Sequence record: NC_070936.1
Length of the DNA: 64,000 nt
Reading direction: 5' to 3' (one strand)
Shown here: positions 11,691 through 54,910 of the stretch, piece after piece
Layout of the letters: each line of letters opens with the position of its first letter
Position numbering within the stretch: position 1 is the first letter of the stretch
Made by a program: the position numbers and the translations under genes
Notes under the pieces: model-generated
Seen by the model: the letters and a program-made list of their open reading frames with translations, nothing else
What the model was told of the DNA's origin: nothing
Database searches by the model: none

Positions 11691-12398
11691 ATGACTTACT
11701 CATTTCAGAATGAGGTTATTAAAAGTCTACCTACTGGTCATCGCTTTATAAGAATGGTTTCTGGGGCTAACAATACCACCATTGTCTACACTGTGAAGAA
11801 TGCAGTTAAACATGAGCTGGTAATGCCCAAGATGGATATCAGTCGGTATTTTTACAAGATACCGACTATCTTCATACCTGAGAACAGCTCCTATAACGAC
11901 CTGTATGAACTCATCAGCGAGCGTTATGGATTAGGGTTACAGAAGAACATTGATTTCTACAATAGCGCCACAGTGCCCGTTACAGAGAGCCCTGTTTATA
12001 TGGAGCTTCCTGTCAATGAGTCTTGTTGCGCTTATTATGGAAACATCCGTTGTTATGTTCTTAAACATAACTTGTATAATGGTAACCTTAAACCCGTTCG
12101 TGATTTAACCAGTACAGACGGTAGTACTTACCTCAACAAACTAAAAATCAAATCTTACTTTATAGGTAAATTGATTTGTTTAGCTGATCATCTAACTATC
12201 GGTGATACACTAACTCCTGACATTGTTGAATTGTTAGTTAGTGATATGGATGGTCAAACTTATCCAGGTGCTTCAGATAGTTATCGCTATATCCTTTCTG
12301 ATGCTAAAGTTATTGATCTTTTTAATGATGGTATTTCTGACATACTTCTAATTGAAACATTTCAAGGTTTACTTTCTATTCGTTATTCTCTTAATTAA
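11691..12398 (+). CDS. Virion-associated protein with a jumbo-phage paralog domain (K.DI..YF...YGL.L...D...L.V...YYG)
   Basis: 235 aa; the motif recurs in 34376..34714 and resembles SPN3US paralog family B from recall. Confidence 0.5.
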   Translation: MTYSFQNEVIKSLPTGHRFIRMVSGANNTTIVYTVKNAVKHELVMPKMDISRYFYKIPTIFIPENSSYNDLYELISERYGLGLQKNIDFYNSATVPVTESPVYMELPVNESCCAYYGNIRCYVLKHNLYNGNLKPVRDLTSTDGSTYLNKLKIKSYFIGKLICLADHLTIGDTLTPDIVELLVSDMDGQTYPGASDSYRYILSDAKVIDLFNDGISDILLIETFQGLLSIRYSLN

Positions 12399-12597
12399 AA
12401 ACGATGGTATTGATCTTGAGACTGATACTGCGAGAGTGGTGTTAGTTGGTTGAGTTAGATGTGTTGCGGAGAAACCGAGTGAGGGGAAAGGGGATTTATT
12501 ATATACAGCAGAGCGTAGCGATATCTCTATTCCTATCTCTTCTCTTTACAATGATCAAGAAATAAAAAGATTCAATAATAAACTTTAAATATCATTT

Positions 12598-12628
12598 CCT
12601 CTACTCCTTTTATCGGGAGTAGGGGTTT
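12598..12628 (+). terminator. Terminator-like hairpin (GTAGG family)
   Basis: CCTCTACTCC...GGAGTAGGGG-TTT, followed by TTATG upstream of the next gene. Confidence 0.6.
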
Positions 12629-12660
12629 GATGTTATGATTGTTCTAAAGAGGAATTAATT

Positions 12661-14247
12661 ATGTTTAAAGTAAAGATTCCTTCCTTTGAGACTTACAAGA
12701 TAGCTACAAGACCAGTTGTCTTAACTTCACTCAAACAAGTACTTGAGTATTTCAATATTGATTTAAATCAGAAAATTTATTTCAATGGTGAAGCAGAAGT
12801 TTCTAAACTCTTAGGTGGGGAATATAACGATAAACGTGGTGGGGACTTAAAGACTGATGTAGGGTATGACAACAAGATATTTGTTGAACTAGAAAGAGAG
12901 ATGGGTGATTATAACAATGAACTAGACGGGAACACAACGGATGATACTATCCCACCTGTTTGGTTTGAGCCCATTACCAAATCTAGAATCACACCTAAGT
13001 TCAGTACACGTATCTATCGCGTTACTGTCAATAAGTATATGAAGGATCGTGTTACAGCTGAACGATACCTTGAAGATATCAGAGCTAAAACCTTTGGTGT
13101 TAACTTCAATAGCTTGTTCAGTATGGAAACGCATTACCCAGTTACTTATCCTGTTCTTCAGTGCTTTAAAGAAATCTTCGACAGACTCATTAAAGCCAAA
13201 CAGGTTCCGGAAGACACTAACTTCATTGATTGGATGTTAAAGAACTCTGTCATTCCTTCTGGAATCTTGAGAAACGTCATTGGTAATAACCCAGTATACG
13301 TTTTCAAACAGTGCATTGACAATATCGGAATCAATATGGAAAACCCCAATATGGCCACCGTAACAAGTGGTGCTTATATTGGTAAGTTTGAAGTTAGCTT
13401 CCAATATTGGTTCTATTGGTCAGAACACAAGAACTGGATCTTTGAATACCCACTGCAAGTATATCAACAACCTATGCCGTATGAGTATATGCCAGAAGTA
13501 TTCGAAGAGAATATCCAGAGCAATACCAACAAACAGTTCTTCGAGTCGGCAGCTGCTAGATCTGTTTGGGGTAGTTCAGATATCATGCCTCTATATCACG
13601 TTCTTCCTAATTTTGATAACTGGAGACCTGAACCAACTAAATGGATTTCTCCCCAGTTACAAATTGTGACGAATGTTGAAGATGTACAAGAACAAGTATT
13701 GATCAACATCAAAGATATTCATGGCTTTGATTGGGATCCTACTTTTATTCATTACATCATGAAGTACCGTGATAAAGTGACTAACCGTCATAATAACCCG
13801 ATGCAGTTCAAAGTTTATTCTGATGAAACAGAAGTTTTAAATAGTCAGATACAGCTGAGAGAGAACGGCGATCTAGTTATTATACGTCCACCGAGAATGT
13901 CCAGTATTTACCGTGTTACATTTAACTTAGATTATGCTTTACGTTTATACAGTGAAATCTGCATAAAGGATTTCCTGGATGATCCTGAGTATACTAAATG
14001 GATTATTGGGATTCTCTACCCGCATTGGCACTTACGTGATGATTGGGGTAACGGTGGGATAGATGATTGGTGGGAGATTCATAACGGGATTGATGTCGGT
14101 GATGGGGATGAGATTGATTTCTATCTTCCATATGGCATGATGGGCTTGACTATTATCGCCCATAATTCAGAAACCTACCAGAAGTACATAACACTTAAAG
14201 AAAGAGGCATTATTAATGGCGCAGACTATTATTGGCCGCGAACCTGA
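12661..14247 (+). CDS. Virion structural protein (neck/tail region, phiKZ gp99-like position)
   Basis: 528 aa, GAGGA RBS; product from synteny only. Confidence 0.5.
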   Translation: MFKVKIPSFETYKIATRPVVLTSLKQVLEYFNIDLNQKIYFNGEAEVSKLLGGEYNDKRGGDLKTDVGYDNKIFVELEREMGDYNNELDGNTTDDTIPPVWFEPITKSRITPKFSTRIYRVTVNKYMKDRVTAERYLEDIRAKTFGVNFNSLFSMETHYPVTYPVLQCFKEIFDRLIKAKQVPEDTNFIDWMLKNSVIPSGILRNVIGNNPVYVFKQCIDNIGINMENPNMATVTSGAYIGKFEVSFQYWFYWSEHKNWIFEYPLQVYQQPMPYEYMPEVFEENIQSNTNKQFFESAAARSVWGSSDIMPLYHVLPNFDNWRPEPTKWISPQLQIVTNVEDVQEQVLINIKDIHGFDWDPTFIHYIMKYRDKVTNRHNNPMQFKVYSDETEVLNSQIQLRENGDLVIIRPPRMSSIYRVTFNLDYALRLYSEICIKDFLDDPEYTKWIIGILYPHWHLRDDWGNGGIDDWWEIHNGIDVGDGDEIDFYLPYGMMGLTIIAHNSETYQKYITLKERGIINGADYYWPRT

Positions 14248-19801: not shown

Positions 19802-21979
19802 ATGTCTCAAGAACAATCCAAGAACTTCCATTTCATCACCTCTAAATCTGGTGCTGATCTTAAAGCGATGATCAACGGTTTTGCAACCAACCCATCTGTA
19901 CACACTGGTAAAGATCTGGGCCTGGAAAGCATCGTTGGTAAAGAGTCCATGTCTCCGACTCTGCGTAACTTTGAAAAAGGTATGGGCTTCAACCAGCGTA
20001 ATGCTGTTAGCTCTGCTATCAGCGGTATTGCTAACTTCAACCAGCGCGCTCAACAGCTGCAGGACATGATCAAACACGGTGGTATGGAATCTTTCTCCAT
20101 GCAGCTGGATCAAGGTGCTGTTGCTCGTCAGAAAGCTGCTACCATCGACCTGAACGCCCGTTCTAACCGTCAGTGGGCTGCTGCTGAAGCTCTGTTCCCG
20201 ACCCTGGTTGTTCCTTACGATCAAGAAGCTCTGGTTCTGCCAATCGACATCGCTGGTGTTGGTGCATATAACAGCTCCGGTAACGCTAACGAAGCTTGGG
20301 AAGATCTACGTCCGATCGCTTCCGTTCTGGCTGACTCCACCTTCAACGCTGGTGACGACCTGAAACTGGTTCCGGTTCTGCCTGCTAACCCTGCTGATGC
20401 AAACACCGCTATGTTTGTTCCTTCAGCTGATTGGGCTCCGTGGGATGCTACTTATGACACTAACGACCTGCTGGGCCGTGAAACTCATAAAACCAACTAC
20501 CTGGCTATTCGCAAAATCAACAACCTGCTGAGCCTGTGCCGTGCTCCTGGTGCTGCTCCGTTCGAGCAGAACGATGAAATCGAAGCTTCTTCGATCCGTC
20601 TGCAGTCCCTGCTGTTCAAAGTTAAAACCAAAGATGGTGAAGGCTTTGTAACTCTGGACACCGAAAACATGGCTGGTGTTGCAGCTCGTCCTTCTACCGG
20701 TGTTACTTCCGATGAAAAACGTCAGATCAACTTCGTTCTGAACGGCATCAACGTAACCAACCTGAAAGACAAAGATGGTAAAGCTACCGAACTGTTCAAG
20801 TCTCTGACCGACGCTGGTCTGAAAGTATTCCTGAGCTTCGAACTGAGCGCTACCTATAGCCGTTCTACCCGTAGCTGGTCTCCGACTGTTTCTCCTGTTG
20901 CTATCGCTTACGTGATCAACAAAGACGGCGACAAACTGGTCCCAGGTACTCCAGGTATGCCAGAAGACATCACCAACCTGATCACTGCTCAGGCACTGGA
21001 AGCTTCTATCCACGGTATCCTGCTGAAACTGAACCATGCTAACACCAACCGTAGCCGTTACGGTACTACTGTTGTTTACGCTAACACCGTTAAGTCTTAC
21101 AACATCAACCGTCGCCAGCCGATCTCCGTTAAGTATCCGATGCTGAACGAAGATAACAACGCTGACGTTCTGGCAATGCTGGTTCAGCAGATGGACGTAA
21201 TGGTTACCCGTAACATGTCTCACGATGCATTTAAAGCGGCTAACATCCACTTTAACTACGTCTACGACAACAACGGTATGAAGATCGTTAACATCAACGA
21301 CGATTCCTCTTCTGTCCTGCCTGGTCAGCACTTCCTGGGTACCACTGGTATCGAAGCGAAACTGAACCTGGTTAAAGAAGTATCTACTCTGGATAGCAAA
21401 GATACTCGTGATAACATCGAAGCAACTCTGGTCAACAAGATCTATGACGTGATCACTGCGCTGCGTGTTAACTCTAACATCTCTGCTCTGAAAGAACTGG
21501 ATAACCGTCCTGAGTCTTACACCATCGTAGCTCACGCTGCTCTGGCTCCGTTCCTGATGACCACCGGTGACTACCGTACCTTCGGTGAAAATGTTAAGTT
21601 CAACATCGTTGAAACTAACATCAGCTCTGAAGTAGGTCGTATGTGGATCGTTCCGACTTCCATGACCAAAGAAGGTTCTGTTGATATCTTCGGTGGTATG
21701 GGCGTCTGTGTAGCTAAAGAACTGCTGGTAATCGAAGGTTCTGTAAACCAGGCCGATCGTCAATACCGCATGATCATCACTCAGCCTGCATACCAGCACC
21801 ACCCGCTGTGCCCAGTTGTTGGCCGTGTGACCATCGAAGACATCCAGGATCTGCTGGGTGACGAAGGTCTGATCACCAAGGTGAACAAACACCTGGCTGA
21901 AATCAGCGGCAAGATTGCTGTTGACAACGGTACTACTGGTACTGGTAAAGAAGTTGCTATCGAAATCCCTAAAGGTTAA
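19802..21979 (+). CDS. Major capsid protein (phiKZ gp120-like)
   Basis: 725 aa, strongest codon bias in the window; A..N..Q..AAEALFPTLVV motif, propeptide with GLE, GKE and GGME|SF sites; strong terminator follows; synteny DnaB-gp119-MCP. Confidence 0.9.
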   Translation: MSQEQSKNFHFITSKSGADLKAMINGFATNPSVHTGKDLGLESIVGKESMSPTLRNFEKGMGFNQRNAVSSAISGIANFNQRAQQLQDMIKHGGMESFSMQLDQGAVARQKAATIDLNARSNRQWAAAEALFPTLVVPYDQEALVLPIDIAGVGAYNSSGNANEAWEDLRPIASVLADSTFNAGDDLKLVPVLPANPADANTAMFVPSADWAPWDATYDTNDLLGRETHKTNYLAIRKINNLLSLCRAPGAAPFEQNDEIEASSIRLQSLLFKVKTKDGEGFVTLDTENMAGVAARPSTGVTSDEKRQINFVLNGINVTNLKDKDGKATELFKSLTDAGLKVFLSFELSATYSRSTRSWSPTVSPVAIAYVINKDGDKLVPGTPGMPEDITNLITAQALEASIHGILLKLNHANTNRSRYGTTVVYANTVKSYNINRRQPISVKYPMLNEDNNADVLAMLVQQMDVMVTRNMSHDAFKAANIHFNYVYDNNGMKIVNINDDSSSVLPGQHFLGTTGIEAKLNLVKEVSTLDSKDTRDNIEATLVNKIYDVITALRVNSNISALKELDNRPESYTIVAHAALAPFLMTTGDYRTFGENVKFNIVETNISSEVGRMWIVPTSMTKEGSVDIFGGMGVCVAKELLVIEGSVNQADRQYRMIITQPAYQHHPLCPVVGRVTIEDIQDLLGDEGLITKVNKHLAEISGKIAVDNGTTGTGKEVAIEIPKG

Positions 21980-39550: not shown

Positions 39551-40315
39551 ATGTCAAAAGATTCAAGGGTTCAAGTATCTGGCAAAATAGTTTATCCATG
39601 GAACCCGTTCCAGGATTTAGCTGATTGTCGTGTTACTGGAGAACCAGTACACGTTGAAGGTGGAAACAAAGGAGCAATTGTTGTTCCTCGTAATGGTCCA
39701 TTCTTCAGCCGTAACTTTGTTATTAAAAAGAAAGGGTCTGATCGCCCCCTTAGTATGGAAGCAGGTGAATATAGTTTCATCCATCCATTCGGTGCCTTCA
39801 TTAAACGTTACAACCGTTTAGCCTGGGGCGCTATTGTTATTAAGGGTGTTGCTACCCCTACTGATTACATTATTGAGTATGACACCATTGGTGGTGATTT
39901 TGTACTAAATGATGCAGCTTATGCGGAAGCAGTAGCTAATACTCTTACAGCCCCACGTACGATTGACTGGAACGATATTGTCAATCTACCTCTGGTATGG
40001 CCACCAGATCCACACGAACACCCAGCATCAGATACCATGAACTATGGTGACTTGATCGCTTGGATGCAATCTTACTTGGATGCCATCACAGATACCGACA
40101 CCAGTGTTAGTTTCGTATCTGAATTCAAGAAACACTTAGAAGCGGATCTTCAGGATGCCCACAAAGCAACCCTGGAGATGTTAGGTGTTGCGCATCTTAA
40201 AGACTGGGCGATGGCAGAGGTTAAAGATATCGAAGGTAACTCTACCGAACTGCTTGTTAACATCGCTGTCTTGAAAGAAGCCATTCGTGGGTATAGTCGT
40301 GGTGATTGGCGTTAA
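39551..40315 (+). CDS. Short tail-fibre/baseplate paralog
   Basis: 254 aa; YPWNP...V..E...VPRNGPFF and IDWNDIVNLPLVWPPDPHEH motifs match the N-terminal module of the next two genes. Confidence 0.65.
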   Translation: MSKDSRVQVSGKIVYPWNPFQDLADCRVTGEPVHVEGGNKGAIVVPRNGPFFSRNFVIKKKGSDRPLSMEAGEYSFIHPFGAFIKRYNRLAWGAIVIKGVATPTDYIIEYDTIGGDFVLNDAAYAEAVANTLTAPRTIDWNDIVNLPLVWPPDPHEHPASDTMNYGDLIAWMQSYLDAITDTDTSVSFVSEFKKHLEADLQDAHKATLEMLGVAHLKDWAMAEVKDIEGNSTELLVNIAVLKEAIRGYSRGDWR

Positions 40316-44107: not shown

Positions 44108-44141
44108 ACTACTGGGGCGATCTTTTGATCGCTCCAATAGT
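44108..44141 (+). terminator. Terminator-like hairpin
   Basis: GGGGCGATC-TTTT-GATCGCTCC with flanking extension and downstream TTTATT. Confidence 0.65.
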
Positions 44142-44158: not shown

Positions 44159-47100
44159 ATGAAAGATTTAGATATTGTCGATATCGATTACTCGGCTAAG
44201 AAAGCTGAGTTTAAGAAAGAAGACAAAGTAGATCTTGCTAAAATTTCTCCACCATGGATAGTACCAGAAGAAGGTCCGATGTATGGGGACAATACTCTTC
44301 GGGTTATCAGAGGTGGATTGGATTTAGTAAGAGGTAAGGATTGGGTTCCTGTAACGGACGTCCCAAAATTATCAGAGCTTACTGGTAAACCTGTTTATCT
44401 TTATATCGAATTAAAAGACCACGTCCTGGCAACAGGTGGTGAAGTAAGTGTTGTTTATCAGCGAGTGGGTAAACCAGTAATATCTGTTAAGACATTATTG
44501 GATATGCTTCAGCAAATGGTTATTGAAGGGAAACCAGTTGACTGGGAAACCCAGATCAATAACAAGCCAGACACTTACTACCCAGCGTGGCACTCTCACG
44601 ACATTCAAAACCCAAATGAGTTAGTTGGGTTTGGTGGTCTGGTTGAACTGTTTAGTATGTTTACTTACAGAGCAAAAGCCGACGGTGGGAAGGTTCGTGA
44701 GTTACTGGAAAAACTCCAGAAAGAAGTTTGGGATAAATTAAACTATACCCAGAAACTTCTTTGGGGTGTAATTATGGATCATAGCCGTAATTACCAAAAC
44801 CCACATAAGTTAAAGCCAGCCGATATCGATCTGGGTAATGTTGGGAACTTTGCAACTGCAACTCCTCAACAAGATGCCGACGCAATGCGTGATGATCTGT
44901 ACTCGACTCCAGCTGGTCTGAAAAGACTCACTGAAGAACTTGCGCCAGATACAGAAGACTTCATTGTTCAGTCCGAATTACCTTTCGGGTACTTTGGTTC
45001 TGGCATCTATATCCCGCCACCAATCACAGGTTCTTTCGAAGGACTGGGTGGTGACTATGAGAACTCGGCTTTCTGTCAGGAAGGGAATGGTTGGACTGTT
45101 GGGTTGTTAAGAGCATTTGATGGTCGTGTTAAGAACCTGTATTACATTTATAAGACAGATGTAAGAAACAGGGACGAGAAACTTGTTCCTTGGTTACACA
45201 CCTACGTCCAATACCAGCATCCAACAATTACTGCTGACGGCTTGGAACCTAACTACGTTATTAACGGTTCTAATAACGATATCATCATGTTGGGTGTTAG
45301 TGATAACCCGACAGAACAATTGAAAGCGGATGAGAAGTTTTATATAAGCTTATCCAACTCAACTTTCGATCCAAATAGCCATGAGTTTAAAGAAACCAAC
45401 TTTGCTGAATTAAGAGGTCCTGAGGATTTAGTTCCGGCCGCTGGTTATACCACAATAGCACATGTTGGTTCTTGGGTTTATCTGATTGTTTCTTATAACA
45501 CCAAAGAAGGATTCACCCAACCAGATGGTGTTGGTGTAACCAACTATCAGCAATGGTTCTATCGTGCTAAATACTCAGACATCAATAATAAAGATGTTGA
45601 CAAAGTAGTATTCCAGCAAGTTGATGTTACCTATGATAATGTCTCCAGAGTGAGAAAATCTGGTAAGGCAATGGCGATGATAGATTATCAGGCCAATGCT
45701 GCTGGCGAAATAACACGAGGGTTGGTTAACTACATCCCTTCTGTAACCACTGCAGAATCTCACAGACGTCGACAATTTATCATTGTTAACAATCCAAATA
45801 ACCCAGCTTTGTCACGGGTGAGGATACTAGCTATCTCATACGCGACCAAGACAACTCAAAACTCAGCGTATGCTGGTTGGGCGAACTTGATCGTCGATTA
45901 TGAATGGAACGGGGAAACGAATACCTGGACACTCTCTCCTCATTGGGAGTTTGGGACCTGGAGCGTTGAAACTGGGTCCATCATAAGTCCTACCAAAAGT
46001 TGGTTAGAATGGTGTAACGGGAATAATGAATCCCGATATCATTCTCAGTCATTCGCTATTAACGCCGGTAGTTATATTCCTGGGTTTGGTTTTGTTAGTA
46101 TCGGTTCTAGACAAACAGGTACACCGCCACTAATGGCGATATCTACGATCTATAACCGTGATGGTGATCCTCAACGCGATTATGAGTATATGGGTTTACC
46201 TCCTAACTGGACCACTGATTCTGGACTGTATAATGGTTGGTGGAACCAAATGGTATTAAGATCTCCATTTGGTGTATCTGGGTTCCCTCGTTTCTATGCT
46301 GACCTGTATCGCTTGGATGGTAAGATCAGACAAACCCCAATAGAAATATTCATGGCAGAAACTGAAGATCAGGATACTGCTAGTTTCTATCGTATTACTG
46401 AAGGTGGGGAAGGTGACAATTACGATAAACGTGATTCTCTCCAATCCAAATACATTCAGATGCCAATCTATGGTCGTAAAACAAACTCTAATTTTGGTAA
46501 GGTTAGTGGAACTCACTACGATGTGGCTACTGTTAACAGACCTAAGAAGAAGGATGTTAAAAGTAGAGAGACAGGTGTGTTTGGATATTTAAGACGCGGG
46601 ATCATTAAGAACCCTGGCGCACCATACATGTTCAGTCGTAAAACTTATGACGACGGAAGCATTAAAGAAATTGTTCAGGAAAATGATGGCAGTATTATTG
46701 TTAACCTGAACCTTAACTTTACAATGGAGCCACTGTCAAAAGTAATCTACGCCAAACCTATCGCTCAAGAGAAATTGAGAATACCTAAAGCAATTTGGGA
46801 AGGTGTGATTAAAACAGCTTTAGAAACCCACTATAGCAAAACTATAGATATGGGTGTCAGTTTCTATGTCTGTCAAGACCCAGGAACTAATGCTGACCAA
46901 CCATACTGCATGTTCTCAATTATTTACCACATCACCGACAATCCTAGGTTAACCAGATCTATCATTGGTCGGTTTAATTGGGATGTTGAGTCGGTAGGAG
47001 CGGATGGTATCAGAGTCATGAAGATGGGTGCTATTGATTATCCATTTAGTGGTTCTAACTACGCCAAGCAACGGTTAGTTCCTCCTTCTCAAAACCCAGA

Positions 47101-47923
47101 GAACGTTATCTCTTATAATGAACACCAAACTAATACTGATGGATCATGGGCTGGTTTGGAATATCGTTATGGTCTTAACATCTGTTATCCACATGTCGAA
47201 ATTCTTGACTTCCCAGAGGAAGGACCTAGAAATATGGAGATATGCTGGTTTACAGGAATACAGATTAAGACAACAGGTAACGCCACCACTCAACGTACAT
47301 TCTTAAGGGTGCGTAATAACCAAACCATCGAGGCTACTTCAGCCACTGGTAATGGTCAGTCCTTTAACGAATACTACTGGCAAGTCCAGGCCAACCCACA
47401 GTGGGGATGGTTGCAAGGTGTTCCTGCTGCTGAGTCTGGTGGTGCGATGGACTTGATGGTTCCATGGAAAGGTCCTGAGGGAAGTCTCCAAGCAGACCAA
47501 GACAAGTACGTTATGCTTGGCGCTACTTACGTTGAGGGTAACTGGTCTGTATTTATCAATGCCGATATTAATGTAACCTTTAATGGATACTCGATGCCGG
47601 CTAAGATGACCAACTGGGATTTGAGAGATCTTACCGATGTCTATCGTGATTCAACATTTTACCTTTACTGTGTCTCTGATGGTTCTGCTGCTCGGTATGA
47701 TATATCCAAGGTTTTAAGACACCATAACCCATCAGCTATTCTGGTTGGTGTCATTACGACAGATTCCTTTGGTATTGTTACCATTCAGCGTTATCAAAGT
47801 TTCACCATTAGTGGTTATCCTTTAACCCGTCAGCGTGATACAGGTGTGCCAGTATCTTCTGGAGCTATCACGGAACAAGGTACATATAAGTTCCTGAAAC
47901 GTAGCGAGTTGTATACAGGTTAA
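44159..47923 (+). CDS. Tail-fibre-like virion protein, paralog 2
   Basis: 1254 aa; VDWETQINNKP...HSH and PPPITGSFEGLGG motifs; C-terminal domain parallel to paralog 1. Confidence 0.7.
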   Translation: MKDLDIVDIDYSAKKAEFKKEDKVDLAKISPPWIVPEEGPMYGDNTLRVIRGGLDLVRGKDWVPVTDVPKLSELTGKPVYLYIELKDHVLATGGEVSVVYQRVGKPVISVKTLLDMLQQMVIEGKPVDWETQINNKPDTYYPAWHSHDIQNPNELVGFGGLVELFSMFTYRAKADGGKVRELLEKLQKEVWDKLNYTQKLLWGVIMDHSRNYQNPHKLKPADIDLGNVGNFATATPQQDADAMRDDLYSTPAGLKRLTEELAPDTEDFIVQSELPFGYFGSGIYIPPPITGSFEGLGGDYENSAFCQEGNGWTVGLLRAFDGRVKNLYYIYKTDVRNRDEKLVPWLHTYVQYQHPTITADGLEPNYVINGSNNDIIMLGVSDNPTEQLKADEKFYISLSNSTFDPNSHEFKETNFAELRGPEDLVPAAGYTTIAHVGSWVYLIVSYNTKEGFTQPDGVGVTNYQQWFYRAKYSDINNKDVDKVVFQQVDVTYDNVSRVRKSGKAMAMIDYQANAAGEITRGLVNYIPSVTTAESHRRRQFIIVNNPNNPALSRVRILAISYATKTTQNSAYAGWANLIVDYEWNGETNTWTLSPHWEFGTWSVETGSIISPTKSWLEWCNGNNESRYHSQSFAINAGSYIPGFGFVSIGSRQTGTPPLMAISTIYNRDGDPQRDYEYMGLPPNWTTDSGLYNGWWNQMVLRSPFGVSGFPRFYADLYRLDGKIRQTPIEIFMAETEDQDTASFYRITEGGEGDNYDKRDSLQSKYIQMPIYGRKTNSNFGKVSGTHYDVATVNRPKKKDVKSRETGVFGYLRRGIIKNPGAPYMFSRKTYDDGSIKEIVQENDGSIIVNLNLNFTMEPLSKVIYAKPIAQEKLRIPKAIWEGVIKTALETHYSKTIDMGVSFYVCQDPGTNADQPYCMFSIIYHITDNPRLTRSIIGRFNWDVESVGADGIRVMKMGAIDYPFSGSNYAKQRLVPPSQNPENVISYNEHQTNTDGSWAGLEYRYGLNICYPHVEILDFPEEGPRNMEICWFTGIQIKTTGNATTQRTFLRVRNNQTIEATSATGNGQSFNEYYWQVQANPQWGWLQGVPAAESGGAMDLMVPWKGPEGSLQADQDKYVMLGATYVEGNWSVFINADINVTFNGYSMPAKMTNWDLRDLTDVYRDSTFYLYCVSDGSAARYDISKVLRHHNPSAILVGVITTDSFGIVTIQRYQSFTISGYPLTRQRDTGVPVSSGAITEQGTYKFLKRSELYTG

Positions 47924-47925
47924 TA

Positions 47926-47955
47926 GAATGGGGAGGAAACTCCCCTTTCTTATTT
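47926..47955 (+). terminator. Terminator-like hairpin
   Basis: GAATGGGGAG-GAAA-CTCCCCTTTC-TTATTT. Confidence 0.65.
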
Positions 47956-47966
47956 AGGAGATTTTC

Positions 47967-50900
47967 ATGTTTGTAGATCCAGATAAACCCTTACCGCCTG
48001 CTGGTGCTAAGGTTGATACACTTGGTTCTGTTCTGGAAGCAATTATTGAAATTGGAAATGCTAAAGCTGTTAGCACCGGTGATGCGGTAGAGTTTGAAAA
48101 ACGTATTACTGAAGCATTACAGGAAACTGATAAAGTAATTGATGGTTTCAGACAAGACGCCACCAACAAAATTAAAGAACACACCGATAAAGAAGGTGCT
48201 GTTCATGGCGAGACCAAAGAAACTGCTGGTTTGGGTTTAAAAGAAAACTGGAAGATGGCGACACCCCAGGAACATTTGGATGGTGAATCACAAGAGAGCT
48301 TCTGTAACCCCCTTGGATTAGCTGCGTTAGTTAAACGCTACATGTCCATCGATCCAACCAACTATATTCGTTCTCGTCTGATGCCAATTGCATCAGGTGG
48401 TCAATTGGGTAATGTCCCTCAGTGGCCATTTAACTGGCGTGAAGGTGAGGTGGTAGAATCACCATTATCATCTATGGATTATTATACACAAACTCCTTGG
48501 CAGTTCTCTACAGACCAAGGTGTGCGTTTATATCCTTCTATGAACGGTTCAGATATCCTTACTCAGAAAAGACCTGACGTAGGGCGTGCTAGACGAGCTG
48601 TAACGCCTTGGGGCGGTACCGATGTTCGTATTTATAATAGCACCTTAGATATCCGTAGAACACGTCCTGGTGTCTTACGTGCAGAATCTAACATAGAACC
48701 AAATAACCAATTGTTAAAAGGTTCACCGCATCTTTTCGATAGACACAGCGTTTTCTACATAGAAAACCAAGATGTCAAGGTCAGAGCGTTTAACAAAATC
48801 AGATTGCCATTCGACACACTTAAGAATGATGGGGCGTTCGCTAAGAACTGGGATGGGATTGTGGAATCTAGAGAGTCCACTATCTATAACCCGGTAATTA
48901 CAATGCAACGTGGTAACTTAGGTGCTGGTGAAAGTATTTATCTTTCAATCAATCTGGATTTGTATAGCTTCACTGAGCATGGCACGGCTGCCAAAGACGG
49001 CCCTGGTAACCCAGCTGAAACAGTCGCCACACTAGGTGACAAATATGACACCATCAACTGGTTGGTGGGTAACAAGAAGTTCGTCATTTATAATCGTCCT
49101 AATGGAGCAGGTAAAGGTATTTTCCTTGACTTGAGAAGTATTCTTAATTTCACTCCTGCGCAATTGGATGGATTCTGGGTCAATGCTGACCATTCCCACG
49201 AACTTCATGTAGCGTTTACCTGGTTGAACAGACTCAAGGGTGAGTTCGCCATTCGTGTTCCATTGGGTTTCTACTCTAAAGACCGTAAATACTACATCAA
49301 CTACTACATGGACTTGTCATTCAAATCCAAAGAACTTGGTGATGGTAAGACAGCAACTATCACTATTGATTCACTGCGAGATATTGATACCAATATCCAG
49401 ACCTTGAATGATAACTTCCAGGTAGAACCAGACGGGCGTTTTGTTGAGTATCCTGCCGATGTCACTAACGATATCTTCCACCCACGTATTTTTGATGGGA
49501 TCTTTGAATCTCAGGGTGGGCATATCAAAACCTATACGTACTATAACCGTCAGTACGTTGGTTACTACCAACATAATGTTGGTGGGACTAAAGAGTGGAT
49601 CGCTAATGGTGATGAGATTAAACCTAAGTTGATTAAATACAACTACGGTCAAATCTCCACACTTAACCAAGACGGTCTGTATGGTGACCACCTAAGACAT
49701 ATCCCGCTGGGTGTAACTGGCGATACCGTCAACTATCTGACATTAACTCGTGATTGGTCAAACACCTATCGCTGGGGTATCGTGAATGCAGAACTGGATA
49801 ACAAGCCAGTTATGTATAGCAGTGCTGATCATGCATATGGTCCTTGGCGTAATACCTTGATCTGGGTAAACCCTAACTACACTAGAGTTCCAGACTTCTT
49901 AGTTGTGAATGAGGAAAACTCCTCCAACTTTGATGTGAACTGTATGGTGTTCAATACCCAGAATGAGTTTAAGGGTTATGCTCAATTCTCTTATAGTACT
50001 GCAGATAGTCAGTCTACTATAGAGGGTGTTGATCCAGTTGAGATAGATGACCAAATCCTGTCTTACATCGCTACCTTTGGTGGTGGTTGGACAAAGAACC
50101 ATCGACAGATGTTCTACTTCCAAAACAGACTGTACTTCTTTAGTCAGTGTCTGTCCATCCCAGAATGGCCGGCTGATGACGTTGACTGTTACTATGGTTG
50201 GATTAGCGGTGCTTACATCGACGTGACCGATGGCGTCAAAACCATCAAGATCAACGGTAATTTAAAAGATCAAACCGTAGCTAAACCGCTCAAAGTAAAT
50301 AACAAGAAGTCAGCAACTAACGATTGGAATAGCGTATTTGGACGAGATCGTTTCGACTCTACCGATACATACCTTATGTTGATGAACCGTAATGGTAACG
50401 TTTCCAAATACAAACTGATGGTTAACCTGGCGCCTCATAACAACTTCTACTTCGAATTTGAATTGGTCGTTGATGCGGGTAATGGAACTACCACTCTGCA
50501 ACCTGACCCTAGTGCTATCGATCCAGTGTTCCCATATGACCCTGCAAAAGGTTATGCGGTTGACTATGAAGCCGTCTCTGCATATGGCACATTAGTTCCA
50601 CACCACATGCACGTAAACTTCCAGTCCCCGGTAATGATGAAGAAATCTCTTTGGAGTTATCGCAAGACGCCTGGTGTTTATGGTGTGTTCTCAATGTCAG
50701 GGAAAACTACCATTGTTAATGGTGGGTTGATGAATGCCATTGAGGGAACTAACATTTATCCAATGGGATCGTTATTAACCATTGGTGGTGGTAACACACT
50801 AGTTAAAATTCCGGTAGATGCCAAAGATTCATTCTATCCTGCAAGTGATGAACTGTTTGTAAGACAGAACGGTACCATTCTTGAGTTGTATGGTCGTAAC

Positions 50901-53864
50901 TATAACCCTAACAACTACGAGACAGAACCTAACGCTGGTGTTGTTCCATGTGGGTTCTTGAAGAATGGAACATTTACTCATTACGACCCGGAAGGTTGGA
51001 GAAACGCATTACTCCCAGTTATTGATAGTTTAAGAATGAACTTTTATGGTTATGGTTCATCCTTCCCTGCCTTTATGGGTATTTATGGTGAAGGTAAACC
51101 AATTAACCGTTTCTTCTTGAACATCAAAGGGACTAAGTTGAAATGGGATACTGCGCAAGGTAGAGTAATACCTCTCAGTGGTTCCAACTCAATTAAAATC
51201 AACGATCAAGTTGTTCAGCCAAATGGTAGTGGGATTTATACAATACCTAATAACTATACTGGCGTATTGAACATTGAGATTTCAGGTTTGCTGGAATTGA
51301 AATGGGCTAAAGGTATGGTTGAATTGGTTGACATTGGTTCTAGTGTTAACAAGTTGAACTTTAAAGGTTCTACTGACTTCACTATCACTAGTGAATTACC
51401 TGGAAACATCGTCGATTTGGATTATGTCTTCGAAGGCGCTACCGGCTCTACTTATCCAGGTATCGAGAAATGGAATACGCAATACGTTCTGAGTATGGAA
51501 GGGACGTTTAAGAATACCGCCAACTTCAATGCCCCATTAGACTCATGGAACGTTAGTGGTTGTAAATCCATGAAAGAGATGTTCATGGGAACTAAGAAAT
51601 TTAATCAACCTATCAATAGTTGGGACGTATCCAATGTGACCACAATGGAATCTATGTTTGAAAACGCCGTGCTTTTCAATCAACCATTGAATAATTGGAA
51701 GTGCGAAAAACTCACTACCGCATCTAAAATGTTCAAAGGGACGATTTCATTTGATGGGGACATGACAGGCTGGTTAACAAAAACCACTTCTGATCTATCA
51801 GAGATGTTTATGAATACCCAGGCATTCACTGGGAAAAGCATTACCAAGTGGTATGTCCAATTTGTAACCGATGTCTCTAGTATGTTCAAAGGTTCCCAAA
51901 AGTTCATGACTAGCGGAGATTTGAGTTATTGGAGATTGGCTAGATGTAGTAATTTTAGTCGGATGTTTGAAGATTCTACTTTCAATGCCGCCGTTAACGG
52001 ATGGGTTTTTGGAAAGTTGTCTGATTGTAGTTATATGTTTAGCGGAACAACTAATTTTAACCGCCCACTTACACAATGGGAATTTGATAACGTTAAAATA
52101 GCCAAAGGAATGTTCCAACAATCTAAAGCTTTCAATCAGGACCTGAAAGATATTTTCTGGGTAAATTGTATTTCATTTAACTCGATGTTTTATGCCTCTA
52201 AGTTTAATGCCTCGGTTTCCGGCTGGATGTTCGCTAGAGAACAAGACCCGGCATCAAAAACAGGAATAGATATGAACTATATGTTCGCATTTACTTCTGA
52301 CTTTATAGGGGATGGATTGGAAACATGGAACACTGAATACGTGACAAGCATGGAAGGTATGTTTAAAAATTGCAACATCTTGGATAAAGACTTATCCATG
52401 TGGGATGTTTCTAAAGTTAAAAACATGGCCTATATGTTTACAGCTTGTAAAGTTTATAACCAATCGGTTAATGACTGGGATGTGAGTAATCTCCTGTACG
52501 CACGCTACATGTTCTCGGAAACAACCCTTTACAACCAGCCTATGGATAAATGGACTACTTCGTCACTCCAGACCATCCAAGGTATGTTCCGTGGCACTAA
52601 GGCATTCAACCAAGATATATCCATGTGGGATACTTCTAAAATTCGTGATATGTCAGAAGCATTTATGAAAGCTGAGAAGTTCAACTACGACTTATCTAGC
52701 TGGAATACTGATTCTGTAACCACGATGCGTGGAATGTTTGAAACCACAGGTGCGTTTGGTACCGGTGATAATAAGTTCTCACTGAGTAAATGGAATACCA
52801 CACAGGTTAGAGACGCGGGTAGAATGTTTGCTGAAAGTAAATATAATGCCAGTGTTGAAGGGTGCTCATGGAGTACTTCTGCTGACCTGACTGGGATGTT
52901 CCAGAATAACCCAGTGTTCAACCAGCCACTTACTGGTTGGGTAGTTAATAACGTTAGATACGTTAAGAATATGTTCTATGGAGCCACTTCCTTTAATAGT
53001 TCTCTTGAAGGACTAAACTGGGAAAAATGTGAAGACTTCAGTTCCATGTTTGAAGGCTGTACTTCCTTCAACCAAGACTTGGGATCTTGGCAGTTTAACA
53101 AATGGTTAAATGGATCTATTCTTTCATCCAACATGTTTAAGAACTGTTTCGCTTTCAAAGGGACCGGTCTTGAAAAATGGGATGGGCTTAACTTCACTAA
53201 CGTCGCTGGAATGTTTAACGGTTGTACCAAGTTTGCAGCAGACATTAGTGGTTGGAAAATCACTCGTATCACCAACTTGGTTAGTACATTTGAAGGATGT
53301 GCTTCGTTTAACTGTGACCTCACTAATTGGGATGTTTCCAAAGTAACATTGTTGACTTCTACCTTTAAAGGTTGTTCAATGTTTAATGGTGATATCAGTA
53401 ATTGGAATACTGGTCTCGTTACAGATATGAACGGAACATTCATGGATTGTACCAACTTCAAAGGTGACATTAGCAAGTGGAATGTTAGAAACGTTATCAG
53501 ATTTGTTGATACGTTCAATACAGCATCTTCATTCGCTGGTGATCTGTCTGGTTGGGATGTAACTACTTCCATTAACTTCTCTGGTATGTTTAAAGCCGCT
53601 GTATCGTTTAACTCTAATATCGGTAGCTGGAATACTGGACGTGCTGTTAATATGAATGACATGTTCAATGGTGCTGTTAAATTCAACCAACCTATCGGTG
53701 GGTGGAACACAAGTATCACTACTGACATGATTTCTATGTTCAATGGTGCATTGGCGTTCAACCAAGACTTGAGTAAGTGGGATGTTAAACGTGTTAACAA
53801 ACACGCTGACTTCGCTACGAACACTCCTTCTTGGGTTGCTCCAAAACCAAACTTTGTAGTATAA
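47967..53864 (+). CDS. Tail-fibre-like virion protein, paralog 3, with C-terminal DUF285/BspA-type repeat array
   Basis: 1965 aa, AGGAG RBS; N-terminal H...HG.....GLG...NW..AT motif shared with the paralogs; the C-terminal ~820 aa are F(N).(D/P)(L/I)..W(D/N)(V/T)S.V..M..MF repeats. Confidence 0.8.
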   Translation: MFVDPDKPLPPAGAKVDTLGSVLEAIIEIGNAKAVSTGDAVEFEKRITEALQETDKVIDGFRQDATNKIKEHTDKEGAVHGETKETAGLGLKENWKMATPQEHLDGESQESFCNPLGLAALVKRYMSIDPTNYIRSRLMPIASGGQLGNVPQWPFNWREGEVVESPLSSMDYYTQTPWQFSTDQGVRLYPSMNGSDILTQKRPDVGRARRAVTPWGGTDVRIYNSTLDIRRTRPGVLRAESNIEPNNQLLKGSPHLFDRHSVFYIENQDVKVRAFNKIRLPFDTLKNDGAFAKNWDGIVESRESTIYNPVITMQRGNLGAGESIYLSINLDLYSFTEHGTAAKDGPGNPAETVATLGDKYDTINWLVGNKKFVIYNRPNGAGKGIFLDLRSILNFTPAQLDGFWVNADHSHELHVAFTWLNRLKGEFAIRVPLGFYSKDRKYYINYYMDLSFKSKELGDGKTATITIDSLRDIDTNIQTLNDNFQVEPDGRFVEYPADVTNDIFHPRIFDGIFESQGGHIKTYTYYNRQYVGYYQHNVGGTKEWIANGDEIKPKLIKYNYGQISTLNQDGLYGDHLRHIPLGVTGDTVNYLTLTRDWSNTYRWGIVNAELDNKPVMYSSADHAYGPWRNTLIWVNPNYTRVPDFLVVNEENSSNFDVNCMVFNTQNEFKGYAQFSYSTADSQSTIEGVDPVEIDDQILSYIATFGGGWTKNHRQMFYFQNRLYFFSQCLSIPEWPADDVDCYYGWISGAYIDVTDGVKTIKINGNLKDQTVAKPLKVNNKKSATNDWNSVFGRDRFDSTDTYLMLMNRNGNVSKYKLMVNLAPHNNFYFEFELVVDAGNGTTTLQPDPSAIDPVFPYDPAKGYAVDYEAVSAYGTLVPHHMHVNFQSPVMMKKSLWSYRKTPGVYGVFSMSGKTTIVNGGLMNAIEGTNIYPMGSLLTIGGGNTLVKIPVDAKDSFYPASDELFVRQNGTILELYGRNYNPNNYETEPNAGVVPCGFLKNGTFTHYDPEGWRNALLPVIDSLRMNFYGYGSSFPAFMGIYGEGKPINRFFLNIKGTKLKWDTAQGRVIPLSGSNSIKINDQVVQPNGSGIYTIPNNYTGVLNIEISGLLELKWAKGMVELVDIGSSVNKLNFKGSTDFTITSELPGNIVDLDYVFEGATGSTYPGIEKWNTQYVLSMEGTFKNTANFNAPLDSWNVSGCKSMKEMFMGTKKFNQPINSWDVSNVTTMESMFENAVLFNQPLNNWKCEKLTTASKMFKGTISFDGDMTGWLTKTTSDLSEMFMNTQAFTGKSITKWYVQFVTDVSSMFKGSQKFMTSGDLSYWRLARCSNFSRMFEDSTFNAAVNGWVFGKLSDCSYMFSGTTNFNRPLTQWEFDNVKIAKGMFQQSKAFNQDLKDIFWVNCISFNSMFYASKFNASVSGWMFAREQDPASKTGIDMNYMFAFTSDFIGDGLETWNTEYVTSMEGMFKNCNILDKDLSMWDVSKVKNMAYMFTACKVYNQSVNDWDVSNLLYARYMFSETTLYNQPMDKWTTSSLQTIQGMFRGTKAFNQDISMWDTSKIRDMSEAFMKAEKFNYDLSSWNTDSVTTMRGMFETTGAFGTGDNKFSLSKWNTTQVRDAGRMFAESKYNASVEGCSWSTSADLTGMFQNNPVFNQPLTGWVVNNVRYVKNMFYGATSFNSSLEGLNWEKCEDFSSMFEGCTSFNQDLGSWQFNKWLNGSILSSNMFKNCFAFKGTGLEKWDGLNFTNVAGMFNGCTKFAADISGWKITRITNLVSTFEGCASFNCDLTNWDVSKVTLLTSTFKGCSMFNGDISNWNTGLVTDMNGTFMDCTNFKGDISKWNVRNVIRFVDTFNTASSFAGDLSGWDVTTSINFSGMFKAAVSFNSNIGSWNTGRAVNMNDMFNGAVKFNQPIGGWNTSITTDMISMFNGALAFNQDLSKWDVKRVNKHADFATNTPSWVAPKPNFVV
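51396..53861 (+). repeat. About 31 tandem ~25-aa DUF285/BspA-family (bacterial surface protein 26-residue) repeats
   Basis: Counted by hand from WNTQYVLSMEGTF (W at 51471) to WDVKRVNKHADF; repeats are visible at protein level and diverged at DNA level. Confidence 0.85.
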
Positions 53865-53866
53865 AC

Positions 53867-53908
53867 CATAAACTCCCTACCCTTCCTTTCGGAGGGGTAG
53901 GGGTTATG
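53867..53908. terminator. Bidirectional terminator (GTAGG family)
   Basis: CATAAACTCCCTACCCTTCC-TTTC-GGAGGGGTAGGGGTTATG between convergent genes. Confidence 0.8.
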
Positions 53909-53914
53909 TTTACT

Positions 53915-54910
53915 TTATTGCGGTCCGGCAGAAGTATCACCACCAGATTTAACACCACCGTGTCTGTGACCAAGATAGGAAATCCCACCAATAGTCCAGT
54001 CACCTTCAGATGTACCAGTACCACCTTTCTGACTAAATCCACCATCAAGAGATTGATTACCTTTAATGGTGTAATTACCAGTCTGTTCGTAGTTACCGGT
54101 TTGCTTAGTGTTACCTTTGTGTGTGATGTCGCCTTCTATCATAATTGTTGGAGACTTCCAAGTAGTTGTCTGTGTTTCAATTGCGATAGAGTTATCAGCT
54201 TTGATCTTCAAATCTTTACACTGAAGATCTACATTGTTTTTGCCCTTTAACAACATACTGTCTTCACAGGACATTGTGATATTCTTTTTCTCAATATTCA
54301 AGAATGATTTTTCTTCATTGATAAATGAGAAGGCATGATCCATAGAGTTAATAGAAAGAATATTATTCTCACCATCCACTATACCAAATTGACCATTCCC
54401 TGTATCGAGAGAAAGACAATATGAAGTAGGTTCCCCATTACCTTGACCAGTAACTAACTGGATCATTTTTTTATGGGAAGATATCATGAATATGTAGTAG
54501 TTATCCGGTGTTACTGGGGTATTCGCATCAACATTGGGAGAAGAGGAAAATGCATAAATAACAGTTTCAAGTCTGAGGGTTCCGTCCATACCGAAATAAG
54601 TCCAACGGTATTTAGACTGACCCACAAACTTATAGACAACTACCTTACTACCATTTCTAACATCGGGTGCTGTCACACGGTTCGTATTCAAAGCCAACCA
54701 TGTCGCAGGAACTGTGTTAGAACTTAAAGTTGTACTGGAGCTGGTATCTCCTGTAGGTGTTCTGGTTGTTACGGTTTGTGTTTGGGTTTGGGTCGTGACC
54801 TCACCATCACCCTCAGGAAACATTGATGGGATATAAACTTGTATCTCATCAGTATTAGTTTCCTTATCCATAGCAACAATGCCGACACCCAGGCATTCTA
54901 ATACATTCAT
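53915..54910 (-). CDS. Baseplate central spike/needle (gpV/gp138-like; phiKZ gp164-like)
   Basis: 331 aa; OB-fold-like N terminus (TAPDVRNGSKVVVY), G.....-type beta-helix repeats, C-terminal HRH metal-binding apex (YLGHRHGGV). Confidence 0.8.
   Translation of the reverse strand: MNVLECLGVGIVAMDKETNTDEIQVYIPSMFPEGDGEVTTQTQTQTVTTRTPTGDTSSSTTLSSNTVPATWLALNTNRVTAPDVRNGSKVVVYKFVGQSKYRWTYFGMDGTLRLETVIYAFSSSPNVDANTPVTPDNYYIFMISSHKKMIQLVTGQGNGEPTSYCLSLDTGNGQFGIVDGENNILSINSMDHAFSFINEEKSFLNIEKKNITMSCEDSMLLKGKNNVDLQCKDLKIKADNSIAIETQTTTWKSPTIMIEGDITHKGNTKQTGNYEQTGNYTIKGNQSLDGGFSQKGGTGTSEGDWTIGGISYLGHRHGGVKSGGDTSAGPQ

What the first reader, a model, noticed from the sequence alone, without database searches (positions are those of the whole stretch)
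47967..53864. Tail-fibre paralog carrying a ~31-unit DUF285/BspA leucine-rich-repeat solenoid
Seen: this gene shares the N-terminal module with its neighbours and reaches a region that aligns by eye with their C-terminal domain near aa 1050 (about nt 51120). The neighbours stop there. This gene continues with a ~90-aa beta-rich linker and then about 31 repeats of ~25 aa. The scaffold residues (FN..L..W....V..M..MF) are conserved while the positions after the Trp are hypervariable, and a few repeats carry insertions (AREQDPASKTG, NKWLNGS, GTGDNK). Established: DUF285/BspA repeats are LRR-like surface adhesion modules of bacteria such as Mycoplasma, Bacteroidetes and Campylobacterota, and are not a standard phage receptor-binding fold. 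Inference: a horizontally acquired repeat solenoid displayed on a jumbo-phage tail could act as a tunable, antibody-like receptor-binding or adhesion surface, diversified by repeat gain, loss or shuffling.
Basis: partly seen in the sequence, partly recalled or inferred. Interest (0 to 1): 0.8.

Follow-up and report, generated by a model that had tools for sequence, protein, structure and literature searches.

The report
Jumbo-phage tail protein with DUF285 solenoid
This intact 1965-residue gene of Klebsiella jumbo phage N1M2 joins a conserved tail-type protein body to 31 DUF285 (LRR-like) repeats; the design is shared by dozens of related phages and already carries a BspA-family label in databases, so what is new is that close relatives have swapped a block of about 12 repeats by recombination.

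Summary
Window 47967-53864(+) is N1M2_118 of Klebsiella phage N1M2. It has 31 Trp-anchored units of about 25 aa, with Pfam DUF285 E=7e-201, and the three quoted insertions are present. A beta-sandwich linker (aa 1051-1131) separates the array from the body, and aa ~1050 is a real module junction.

- By sequence, gp118 shares only about 108 aa (aa 34-142) with its neighbours. Fold comparison suggests the whole body is a distant paralog of them.
- The array is not a recent acquisition. It is present in 58 of 60 ortholog clusters, starts at the same position in all of them, and has genome-typical GC.
- DUF285 is not rare in phages: tblastn finds it in 114 phage records. [quoted passage not shown]
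- Units are colinear among relatives, so there is no shuffling. They are about 31% identical to each other, and the DNA shows no tandem repeat.
- Unit number does vary: about 10-44 across the family, and 29 versus 31 among close relatives.

The dominant variation among close relatives is recombinational replacement of a ~300-aa cassette (units ~4-15). One pair of phages is 97-100% identical in DNA elsewhere but 53-67% identical in the cassette.

Virion location is unproven. I rate this a new member of a known kind, of moderate interest.

The parts
47967..53864 (+). N1M2_118 (gp118), intact 1965-aa ORF: tail-type body plus DUF285 array
   Evidence: PHROG 17273 covers aa 1-1314
47956..47960 (+). 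Shine-Dalgarno-like AGGAG, 6 nt before the ATG
   Evidence: read directly from the sequence
48066..48392 (+). N-proximal module (aa 34-142) shared with gp115, gp116 and gp117. It is helical and modelled with low confidence as a monomer. I infer it is the attachment or oligomerisation part.
   Evidence: hhalign prob 96%, E 3e-9 to gp116 aa 168-275; BLASTP; phrog_2163 and phrog_14667; helices 18-35 and 40-73, pLDDT below 50-70
48414..51116 (+). Conserved beta-rich body (aa ~150-1050), with propeller-like folds
   Evidence: pLDDT about 90 over aa 150-1040. Foldseek PDB hits are beta-propellers, E 1.5e-5 and weaker. Foldseek BFVD hits are jumbo-phage virion structural and minor tail proteins, E 1e-18 to 3e-21. 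85-86% identical in the Serratia phages.
51117..51413 (+). Beta-sandwich linker after the module junction (aa 1051-1149)
   Evidence: strands at model residues 6-81; P0055 homology ends at aa 1050; no Pfam match
51414..53852 (+). DUF285/PARCEL LRR-like solenoid: 31 Trp-anchored units (aa 1150-1962) and a short C-terminal cap
51669..52604 (+). Variable cassette (aa ~1235-1546, units ~4-15), exchanged by recombination among close relatives. The N1M2 allele has no close match in the database.
52398..52547 (+). Units 13-14 (aa 1478-1527): present in N1M2 and Sureiya, absent as one in-register 50-aa gap in Yubaba
53874..53903 (+). 13-bp-stem hairpin with T-rich tail between convergent gp118 and gp119 (terminator-like)
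39551..40315 (+). gp115, 254 aa: the N-module alone (phrog_2163; called short tail fibre in the Serratia phage records)
40379..44098 (+). gp116, 1239 aa, putative virion structural protein; paralog of gp117
44159..47923 (+). gp117, 1254 aa, putative virion structural protein; paralog of gp116
53915..54910 (-). gp119, baseplate assembly protein (phrog_3216; weak gpV-like match), convergent with gp118

Best explanation
gp118 is the fourth member of a block of tail/baseplate-associated proteins (gp115-118) of an OBP-like jumbo phage.

Architecture:
- A helical N-proximal module, shared with the three upstream genes. It probably docks the protein on the tail or baseplate, or oligomerises it.
- A conserved beta-rich body of about 900 aa.
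- A small beta-sandwich linker.
- A single LRR-like DUF285 solenoid of 31 turns, as the exchangeable distal module.

I infer that the solenoid is a binding surface for a structure on the host envelope. I also infer that specificity resides mainly in units ~4-15, which related phages exchange as a cassette by homologous recombination during co-infection.

Shown here: the architecture, the fold, the family-wide conservation, the module junction, the optional nature of the array, and the recombinational origin of the cassette differences.

Inferred, not shown: virion location, binding, and a role in host specificity.
For: Context:
- The order gp114-gp119 followed by SbcC is conserved from N1M2 to Yubaba, Sureiya, OBP and PS1. 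The neighbours are annotated virion structural, short tail fibre, tail protein and baseplate assembly.
- PHROG links the shared N-module to tail fibre, minor tail and virion structural families.
- The body fold matches jumbo-phage virion structural and minor tail proteins in BFVD at E 1e-18 to 3e-21.
- A paper on the related phage AerS_266 makes the same argument: RBP paralogs share N-termini that are used for attachment.

Modularity at aa ~1050:
- DUF285 array in 58 of 60 ortholog clusters.
- An unrelated 679-aa C-terminus in P0055.
- No C-terminal module in P0060 or in PS1 gp126, which is annotated 'tail protein'.

Fold:
- pLDDT 92.3.
- Foldseek hits to ligand-binding LRR ectodomains with probability up to 1.0.

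Cassette:
- Sureiya versus contig L005 is 97-100% identical in DNA outside the cassette and 53-67% identical inside it.
- Synonymous-only differences rise from 4.7% to 41% of codons.
- Yubaba versus P0004 shows the reverse pattern: body 91% identical, cassette 98%.
- These phages hold a single DUF285 locus each, so the donor is another phage.
- Between alleles, scaffold positions stay and positions 2-7 and 17-18 change.

Precedent: DUF285 proteins are packaged in particles of the algal giant virus AaV.
Against: - No virion proteomics or imaging places any family member on a particle.
- The N1M2 paper reports no visible tail fibres by EM and no mass spectrometry.
- The N1M2 and OBP GenBank records call this gene 'hypothetical' while calling gp114-117 (OBP gp141-144) 'putative virion structural protein'. 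If those labels rest on the OBP particle mass spectrometry, a 1713-aa protein was missed. I could not read that paper.
- Global TM-scores to LRR structures are low, 0.12-0.23. No solved structure matches by sequence.
- One side of the clearest cassette comparison is a metagenomic (Logan) contig, so an assembly chimera cannot be fully excluded. The Yubaba/P0004 and P0002/P0005 patterns argue against it.
- No ligand is known for any DUF285 array.
Confidence: 0.5

Rival explanations
1. Accessory virion adhesin. The protein is on the particle, but the solenoid is not the receptor-binding determinant for infection. It mediates weak, reversible adherence to cell-surface or environmental polymers, in the manner proposed for Ig-like decoration domains. 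Other proteins (gp115-117 or others) make the specific contact.
For: - The array is dispensable in nature: the PS1-group orthologs and P0060 lack it in the same syntenic position.
- Array length ranges from about 10 to about 44 units without loss of the gene.
- Three other paralogs with the same N-module are available as receptor binders.
Against: - Cassette exchange with retention of the scaffold is the pattern expected of a specificity determinant.
- The distal half of the array is as conserved as the body, 80% versus 86%. That suggests constraint beyond generic stickiness.
Confidence: 0.25
2. Not a virion component. The protein acts inside or on the infected cell as a large LRR-type protein-binding scaffold made during infection, and merely sits next to tail genes.
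For: - 'Hypothetical protein' labels in N1M2 and OBP, next to neighbours labelled virion structural.
- No fibres seen by EM.
- LRR folds bind proteins in many intracellular contexts, for example the SHOC2 hit.
Against: - The gene shares the N-module and the body fold with virion structural and tail proteins.
- The array-less ortholog is annotated tail protein, in conserved synteny beside the baseplate gene.
Confidence: 0.15
3. The array evolves mainly by unit gain, loss and shuffling through slippage or unequal crossing-over between repeats.
For: - One in-register two-unit gap in Yubaba.
- Family-wide span of about 10-44 units.
- Short motif-level DNA similarity between units, 14-57 nt at 60-84% identity.
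Against: - Units are only about 31% identical on average, 52% at most.
- Tandem Repeats Finder finds no array.
- Order is colinear in all close relatives.
- Among six close relatives there is one unit-number change, against at least three cassette alleles.
Confidence: 0.1

Closest known systems
PARCEL / DUF285 / TIGR02167 repeat surface proteins (Mycoplasma lipoproteins such as LppQ; 'BspA family' proteins of Flavobacteriia), Roske et al. 2010, PMC2996958
   Same: - The same 25-residue amphipathic repeat, matched above the curated cut-offs.
- Tandem arrays with a conserved hydrophobic scaffold and variable hydrophilic positions.
- Long ORFs on the opposite strand, as that paper notes.
   Different: - No signal peptide or lipobox-type N-terminus is evident. 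Instead there is a ~1050-aa phage tail-type body.
- Identity to bacterial arrays is only about 30-36%.
- The Mbov_0838 lipoprotein model scores below its cut-off, 423 against 500.
Orthologs in OBP-like jumbo phages (OBP gp145, Serratia Yubaba/Sureiya, Erwinia AH04, Kosakonia Kc263, Edwardsiella pEt-SU, Aeromonas LAh10/D3/D6/D9; PHROG 17273)
   Same: Same body, same junction, same array start and same synteny. [quoted passage not shown]
   Different: - N1M2 and the Serratia phages have 29-31 units, against about 20 in most others and about 44 in LAh10.
- N1M2's cassette allele is unique in the database, at most 63% identical to any other.
Aeromonas phage PS1 gp126 'tail protein' (1174 aa) and relatives
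   Same: Orthologous body (36% identity over aa 1-1050) in the same syntenic slot, before the baseplate assembly gene.
   Different: No DUF285 array; the protein ends shortly after the junction.
Vibrio jumbo phage vB_VhaM_pir03 ORF200 and ORF287 (PARCEL/DUF285), PMC7765460
   Same: DUF285 arrays in a jumbo myovirus. That paper records them as previously undescribed in phages and of unknown role.
   Different: Different protein architecture (a 19-kb ORF). It is not an ortholog of the gp118 body.
Leucine-rich-repeat ectodomains (plant receptor kinases RGFR1 and FLS2, TLR3, SHOC2)
   Same: Solenoid of about 24-25-residue turns, with one short beta element per turn. Foldseek probability up to 1.0, E down to 8e-6.
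   Different: About 9-10% identity and TM 0.12-0.23, so curvature and twist differ. No Pfam LRR family other than DUF285 is matched.
Mosaic receptor-binding tips of tailed-phage fibres (general knowledge: conserved proximal part, recombining distal part)
   Same: Conserved anchor and body, an exchangeable distal region, and sharp identity breakpoints between near-identical phages.
   Different: The exchanged unit lies inside a repeat solenoid rather than being a terminal domain. Both the first ~3 units and the last ~16 units stay conserved.
DUF285 proteins packaged in Aureococcus anophagefferens virus particles, PMC7507832
   Same: Precedent for DUF285 proteins as components of virus particles, by proteomics.
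   Different: A giant virus of an alga, with unrelated architecture and unknown function.

Membership tests
Pfam PF03382 DUF285 (LRR clan) | Score above the gathering threshold of the family model | tested here: met
   655.5 bits against a cut-off of 25, E 7.4e-201, 9 stretches
NCBIfam TIGR02167 PARCEL (26-residue) repeat | Score above the curated cut-off | tested here: met
   101.9 bits against a cut-off of 30
PARCEL (Roske et al. 2010) | Tandem ~25-aa amphipathic repeats with a conserved hydrophobic scaffold and variable hydrophilic positions | tested here: met
   31 units; W1 and F13 100%, F19 83%; entropy 2-3 bits at the other positions
PARCEL (Roske et al. 2010) | Dyad symmetry in the coding DNA and ORFs on the opposite strand | tested here: inconclusive
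   A 297-aa antisense ORF exists, but only 6 weak, widely spaced inverted repeats were found. No MEME-type palindrome analysis was run.
Mbov_0838-type PARCEL surface lipoprotein (NF045896) | Score above the curated cut-off (500 bits) | tested here: not met
   423.5 bits; the match is to the repeats only
BspA-type LRR (Pfam LRR_5, the repeat of the Tannerella BspA protein; family assignment from my own knowledge) | Match to that LRR family model | tested here: not met
   Only PF03382 was reported at E<=0.01. The database name 'BspA family' is a label applied to DUF285 proteins.
Leucine-rich-repeat solenoid fold | Predicted structure superposes on solved LRR proteins | tested here: met
   Foldseek probability 0.98-1.0, E 8e-6 to 3e-4, to RGFR1, FLS2 and SHOC2. 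Global TM is low, 0.12-0.23.
Phage tail fibre / receptor-binding protein | Gene in the tail/baseplate block and homology to tail proteins | tested here: met
   Synteny; PHROG tail families on the shared N-module; BFVD structural matches
Phage tail fibre / receptor-binding protein | Physical presence on the virion | not testable with these tools
   No proteomics found. The OBP paper is not held.
Phage tail fibre / receptor-binding protein | Binds a host receptor and determines adsorption | not testable with these tools
   Only indirect evidence: a mosaic cassette
gp116/gp117 paralog family (phrog_3573) | Sequence homology along the protein | tested here: not met
   hhalign finds only aa 34-142. 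gp118 belongs to phrog_17273, not phrog_3573. Fold-level similarity is suggested by BFVD hits of 1150-1250 aa.

The most novel reading that the evidence does not exclude
DUF285 solenoids are a previously unrecognised class of phage receptor-binding module. In OBP-like jumbo phages, a block of about 12 LRR-like turns would act as an exchangeable specificity cassette, passed between co-infecting phages. Host recognition would then be re-targeted by allele replacement inside a repeat scaffold rather than by swapping a terminal tip domain.
Probability: 0.3. Interest if true: 0.65.

Novelty: new member of a known kind. Interest (0 to 1): 0.4.

Why it matters
Receptor-binding proteins of phiKZ/OBP-like jumbo phages are poorly defined, and no DUF285/PARCEL array has a known ligand in any organism. 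If the solenoid is on the tail, this family would offer two things:
- A natural series in which to study what DUF285 repeats bind: no array, about 10 to about 44 units, and at least three cassette alleles on near-identical backbones.
- A sequence marker (the cassette allele) for predicting adsorption specificity within this phage clade.

If it is not on the virion, the finding is an ordinary, already-annotated repeat protein.

Tried and rejected
- **Slippage-prone DNA repeat.** Tandem Repeats Finder found nothing of period 75. Direct repeats are only 14-57 nt at 60-84% identity. Rejected as the main driver.
- **Antisense ORF 52976-53869(-), 297 aa, as a gene.** It has no significant Pfam match, and it is broken into 97- and 167-aa ORFs in Sureiya and Yubaba. 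Rejected; it is a by-product of the repeat composition, as noted for PARCELs.
- **Recent horizontal acquisition.** Rejected on GC content, on family-wide presence, and on 30-36% identity to bacterial arrays.
- **In-situ targeted mutagenesis or positive selection as the source of cassette differences.** Rejected for the Sureiya/L005 pair, because synonymous differences rise together with replacements.
- **C-terminal similarity to the neighbours 'by eye'.** Not found by BLASTP or hhalign.
- **Sequence search of PDB.** No hit for gp118, and only noise for gp116 and gp117. I had phiKZ gp131, a baseplate-periphery protein with a propeller domain (from my own knowledge), in mind as a relative of the body. 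It did not come back as a named hit in the PDB fold search.
- **Pfam on the N-module and the linker at E<=10.** Nothing.
- **Literature.** No virion proteomics for N1M2, ZPAH34, AerS_266 or Kc263. The OBP paper is not held.
- **Identity of BFVD entry G9IA35.** An attempt to confirm that it is OBP gp143 returned only UniParc identifiers. The link rests on the identical length, 1246 aa.
- **Technical limits.** Loci L002 and L003 were not exported to the script machine, so I worked from tool-made alignments instead.
Full report
**Identity and observation**

The window is Klebsiella phage N1M2 (MN642089.1, bases 62001-126000), a 253-kb jumbo myovirus isolated on Klebsiella aerogenes. The finding's ORF, 47967-53864(+), is intact and encodes 1965 aa. 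It is N1M2_118, annotated 'hypothetical protein'. It has an AGGAG 6 nt before the ATG. A 13-bp-stem hairpin follows it, before the convergent baseplate gene.

The repeat array is real and far beyond chance:
- Pfam DUF285 scores 655 bits, E 7.4e-201.
- NCBIfam TIGR02167, now named 'PARCEL repeat', scores 102 bits against a cut-off of 30.
- Trp anchors define 31 units between aa 1169 and 1962, with modal spacing 25 aa.
- Self-identity at offset 25 is 24%, against about 8% in the body.
- In the canonical units, W1 and F13 are invariant, and F19, N20 and M12 are 83%, 72% and 67% conserved. The remaining positions carry 2-3 bits of entropy.

**Architecture**

AlphaFold models built on 34-35 orthologs show the following.
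- aa 1-150 is helical and of low confidence as a monomer.
- aa 150-1040 is a confident beta-rich body. The aa 1-1150 model has mean pLDDT 83.7.
- aa 1051-1131 is a beta-sandwich. It is followed by a solenoid with one short beta element per 25 residues, at mean pLDDT 92.3.

Foldseek places the solenoid with ligand-binding LRR ectodomains and SHOC2. Probability reaches 1.0 and E reaches 8e-6, but TM is only 0.12-0.23, so the curvature differs. No solved structure matches by sequence. The body resembles beta-propeller proteins in the PDB only weakly.

In BFVD the body matches jumbo-phage proteins of about 1150-1250 aa that are annotated virion structural or minor tail proteins, at E 1e-18 to 3e-21. 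One of these entries has exactly the length of OBP gp143, the ortholog of the neighbour gp116. I could not confirm that identity.

**Relation to the neighbours**

gp115, gp116 and gp117 share an N-terminal module of about 260 aa (phrog_2163). gp116 and gp117 are paralogs along their whole length.

By sequence, gp118 shares only aa 34-142 with them. BLASTP gives E 5e-5 and 2e-3, and hhalign gives probability 96%, E 3e-9. gp118 also belongs to a different PHROG, 17273. The fold search suggests the bodies are nevertheless distant paralogs. I therefore rate 'tail-fibre paralog' as partly right.

**The junction at aa ~1050 is real**

A search with the body (aa 1-1140) found 60 ortholog clusters of 1092-2311 aa, and 58 of them carry DUF285. 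The exceptions are:
- P0055, homologous up to aa 1050, which then carries an unrelated, non-repetitive 679-aa C-terminus without a Pfam match.
- P0060, which ends at the junction.

The Aeromonas phage PS1 group has a 1174-aa array-less ortholog. It is annotated 'tail protein' and sits in the same syntenic slot, before the baseplate assembly gene and SbcC. The body is therefore a conserved tail-block protein, and the DUF285 array is an optional distal module.

**Is the array novel, recently acquired or variable?**

It is not recent. The array begins at aa ~1165-1186 in every ortholog. It occurs in phages of at least nine gammaproteobacterial genera. Its GC equals that of the genome. The nearest bacterial arrays, mostly Flavobacteriia 'BspA family' proteins, are about 30-36% identical.

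It is not unannotated either. [quoted passage not shown] The pir03 paper had already noted PARCEL proteins in a jumbo phage.

The array does vary. Its span ranges from about 10 to about 44 units across the family. Among the close relatives, Yubaba lacks exactly units 13-14 as one in-register 50-aa gap.

There is no shuffling, because the arrays are colinear. Units are only about 31% identical to each other. No tandem repeat is detectable at the DNA level. Frequent slippage is therefore not expected.

**The new observation: a recombining cassette**

N1M2 is 86% identical to the Serratia phage orthologs in the body and 80% identical in units 15-31. It is only 57-62% identical in aa 1150-1477.

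Among closer relatives the pattern is sharper.
- P0002 (contig L005) and Sureiya are 99% identical in the body and 98% identical in the distal array, but 62% identical in aa 1150-1477. About 150 of their 158 differences fall in aa ~1235-1546.
- At the DNA level, identity is 97-100% outside this block and 53-67% at aa ~1251-1490, with shoulders on each side.
- The share of codons with synonymous-only differences rises from 4.7% to 41%. This marks replacement by a diverged allele, not local mutation.
- Yubaba and P0004 show the opposite pattern: body 91% identical, cassette 98%.

At least three alleles exist: N1M2; Sureiya/Yubaba/P0004; and P0002/P0005. Their distribution is incongruent with the body tree. 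Each of these phages has a single DUF285 locus, so donors must be other phages. Between alleles the scaffold positions are kept, and positions 17-18 and 2, 4, 5, 7 change most. N1M2's allele has no match above 63% identity among 5.8 billion proteins.

One caveat applies. L005 is a Logan assembly, so a chimera is possible for that one pair.

**Mechanism and confidence**

The best-supported reading (confidence 0.5) is a tail- or baseplate-associated protein.
- Its N-module docks or oligomerises it.
- Its LRR-like solenoid is a binding surface for the host envelope.
- Units ~4-15 form the specificity cassette.

The architecture, fold, modularity and recombination are shown. Virion location and binding are inferred.

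Evidence against this reading:
- No proteomics exist in the papers I could read.
- No fibres were visible by EM of N1M2.
- The gene is labelled 'hypothetical' beside neighbours labelled 'virion structural' in both the N1M2 and OBP records.
- The OBP paper, which may hold particle mass spectrometry, is not held.

The rivals are an accessory adhesin not needed for infection (0.25), a non-virion protein (0.15), and repeat slippage as the main mode of change (0.1).

**Verdict**

This is a new member of a known kind: DUF285/PARCEL repeat proteins, here in the conserved PHROG 17273 family of OBP-like jumbo phages. Interest is moderate (0.4). It rests on the uncharacterised function of DUF285 and on the cassette exchange, not on rarity.

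Noticed in passing
window 52976-53869 (-): A 297-aa ORF lies antisense to the distal part of the DUF285 array. It has no significant Pfam match and is broken into 97- and 167-aa ORFs in Sureiya and Yubaba. It is most likely a by-product of the repeat composition, a property reported for PARCEL coding regions.
   Followed up: yes
window 44113-44136, 47930-47945, 53874-53903: GC-rich hairpins with T-rich tails follow each of gp116, gp117 and gp118. The last has a 13-bp stem and lies between convergent genes. They may be terminators or RNA-stability elements that punctuate the tail-gene block.
   Followed up: partly
window 19802-21979 (+): The major capsid protein gene stands out at GC 0.49, against about 0.41 for the window. 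It carries a 489-aa antisense ORF (20423-21892, -), which is probably compositional.
   Followed up: partly
window 12001-14000: GC dips to 0.36 around the 12398-12661 intergenic gap and the start of N1M2_91, a putative virion structural protein. Not examined.
   Followed up: no
P0055 (metagenomic ortholog, 1729 aa), residues 1047-1729: An ortholog of the gp118 body carries an unrelated 679-aa C-terminal domain in place of the DUF285 array. The domain is non-repetitive, Thr/Asn/Gly-rich and has no Pfam match. It is an alternative distal module of unknown fold.
   Followed up: partly
P0002 and P0005, insertion after N1M2 residue 1393: Cassette allele C carries a 9-aa loop insertion in unit 9, at the place where N1M2 and the Serratia phages have a 27-aa unit. 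This is another sign that loops in the cassette units tolerate length change.
   Followed up: no
P0009 (1708 aa) on a 267-kb contig: [quoted passage not shown] The contig length suggests an OBP-like jumbo phage genome sitting in a bacterial assembly.
   Followed up: no
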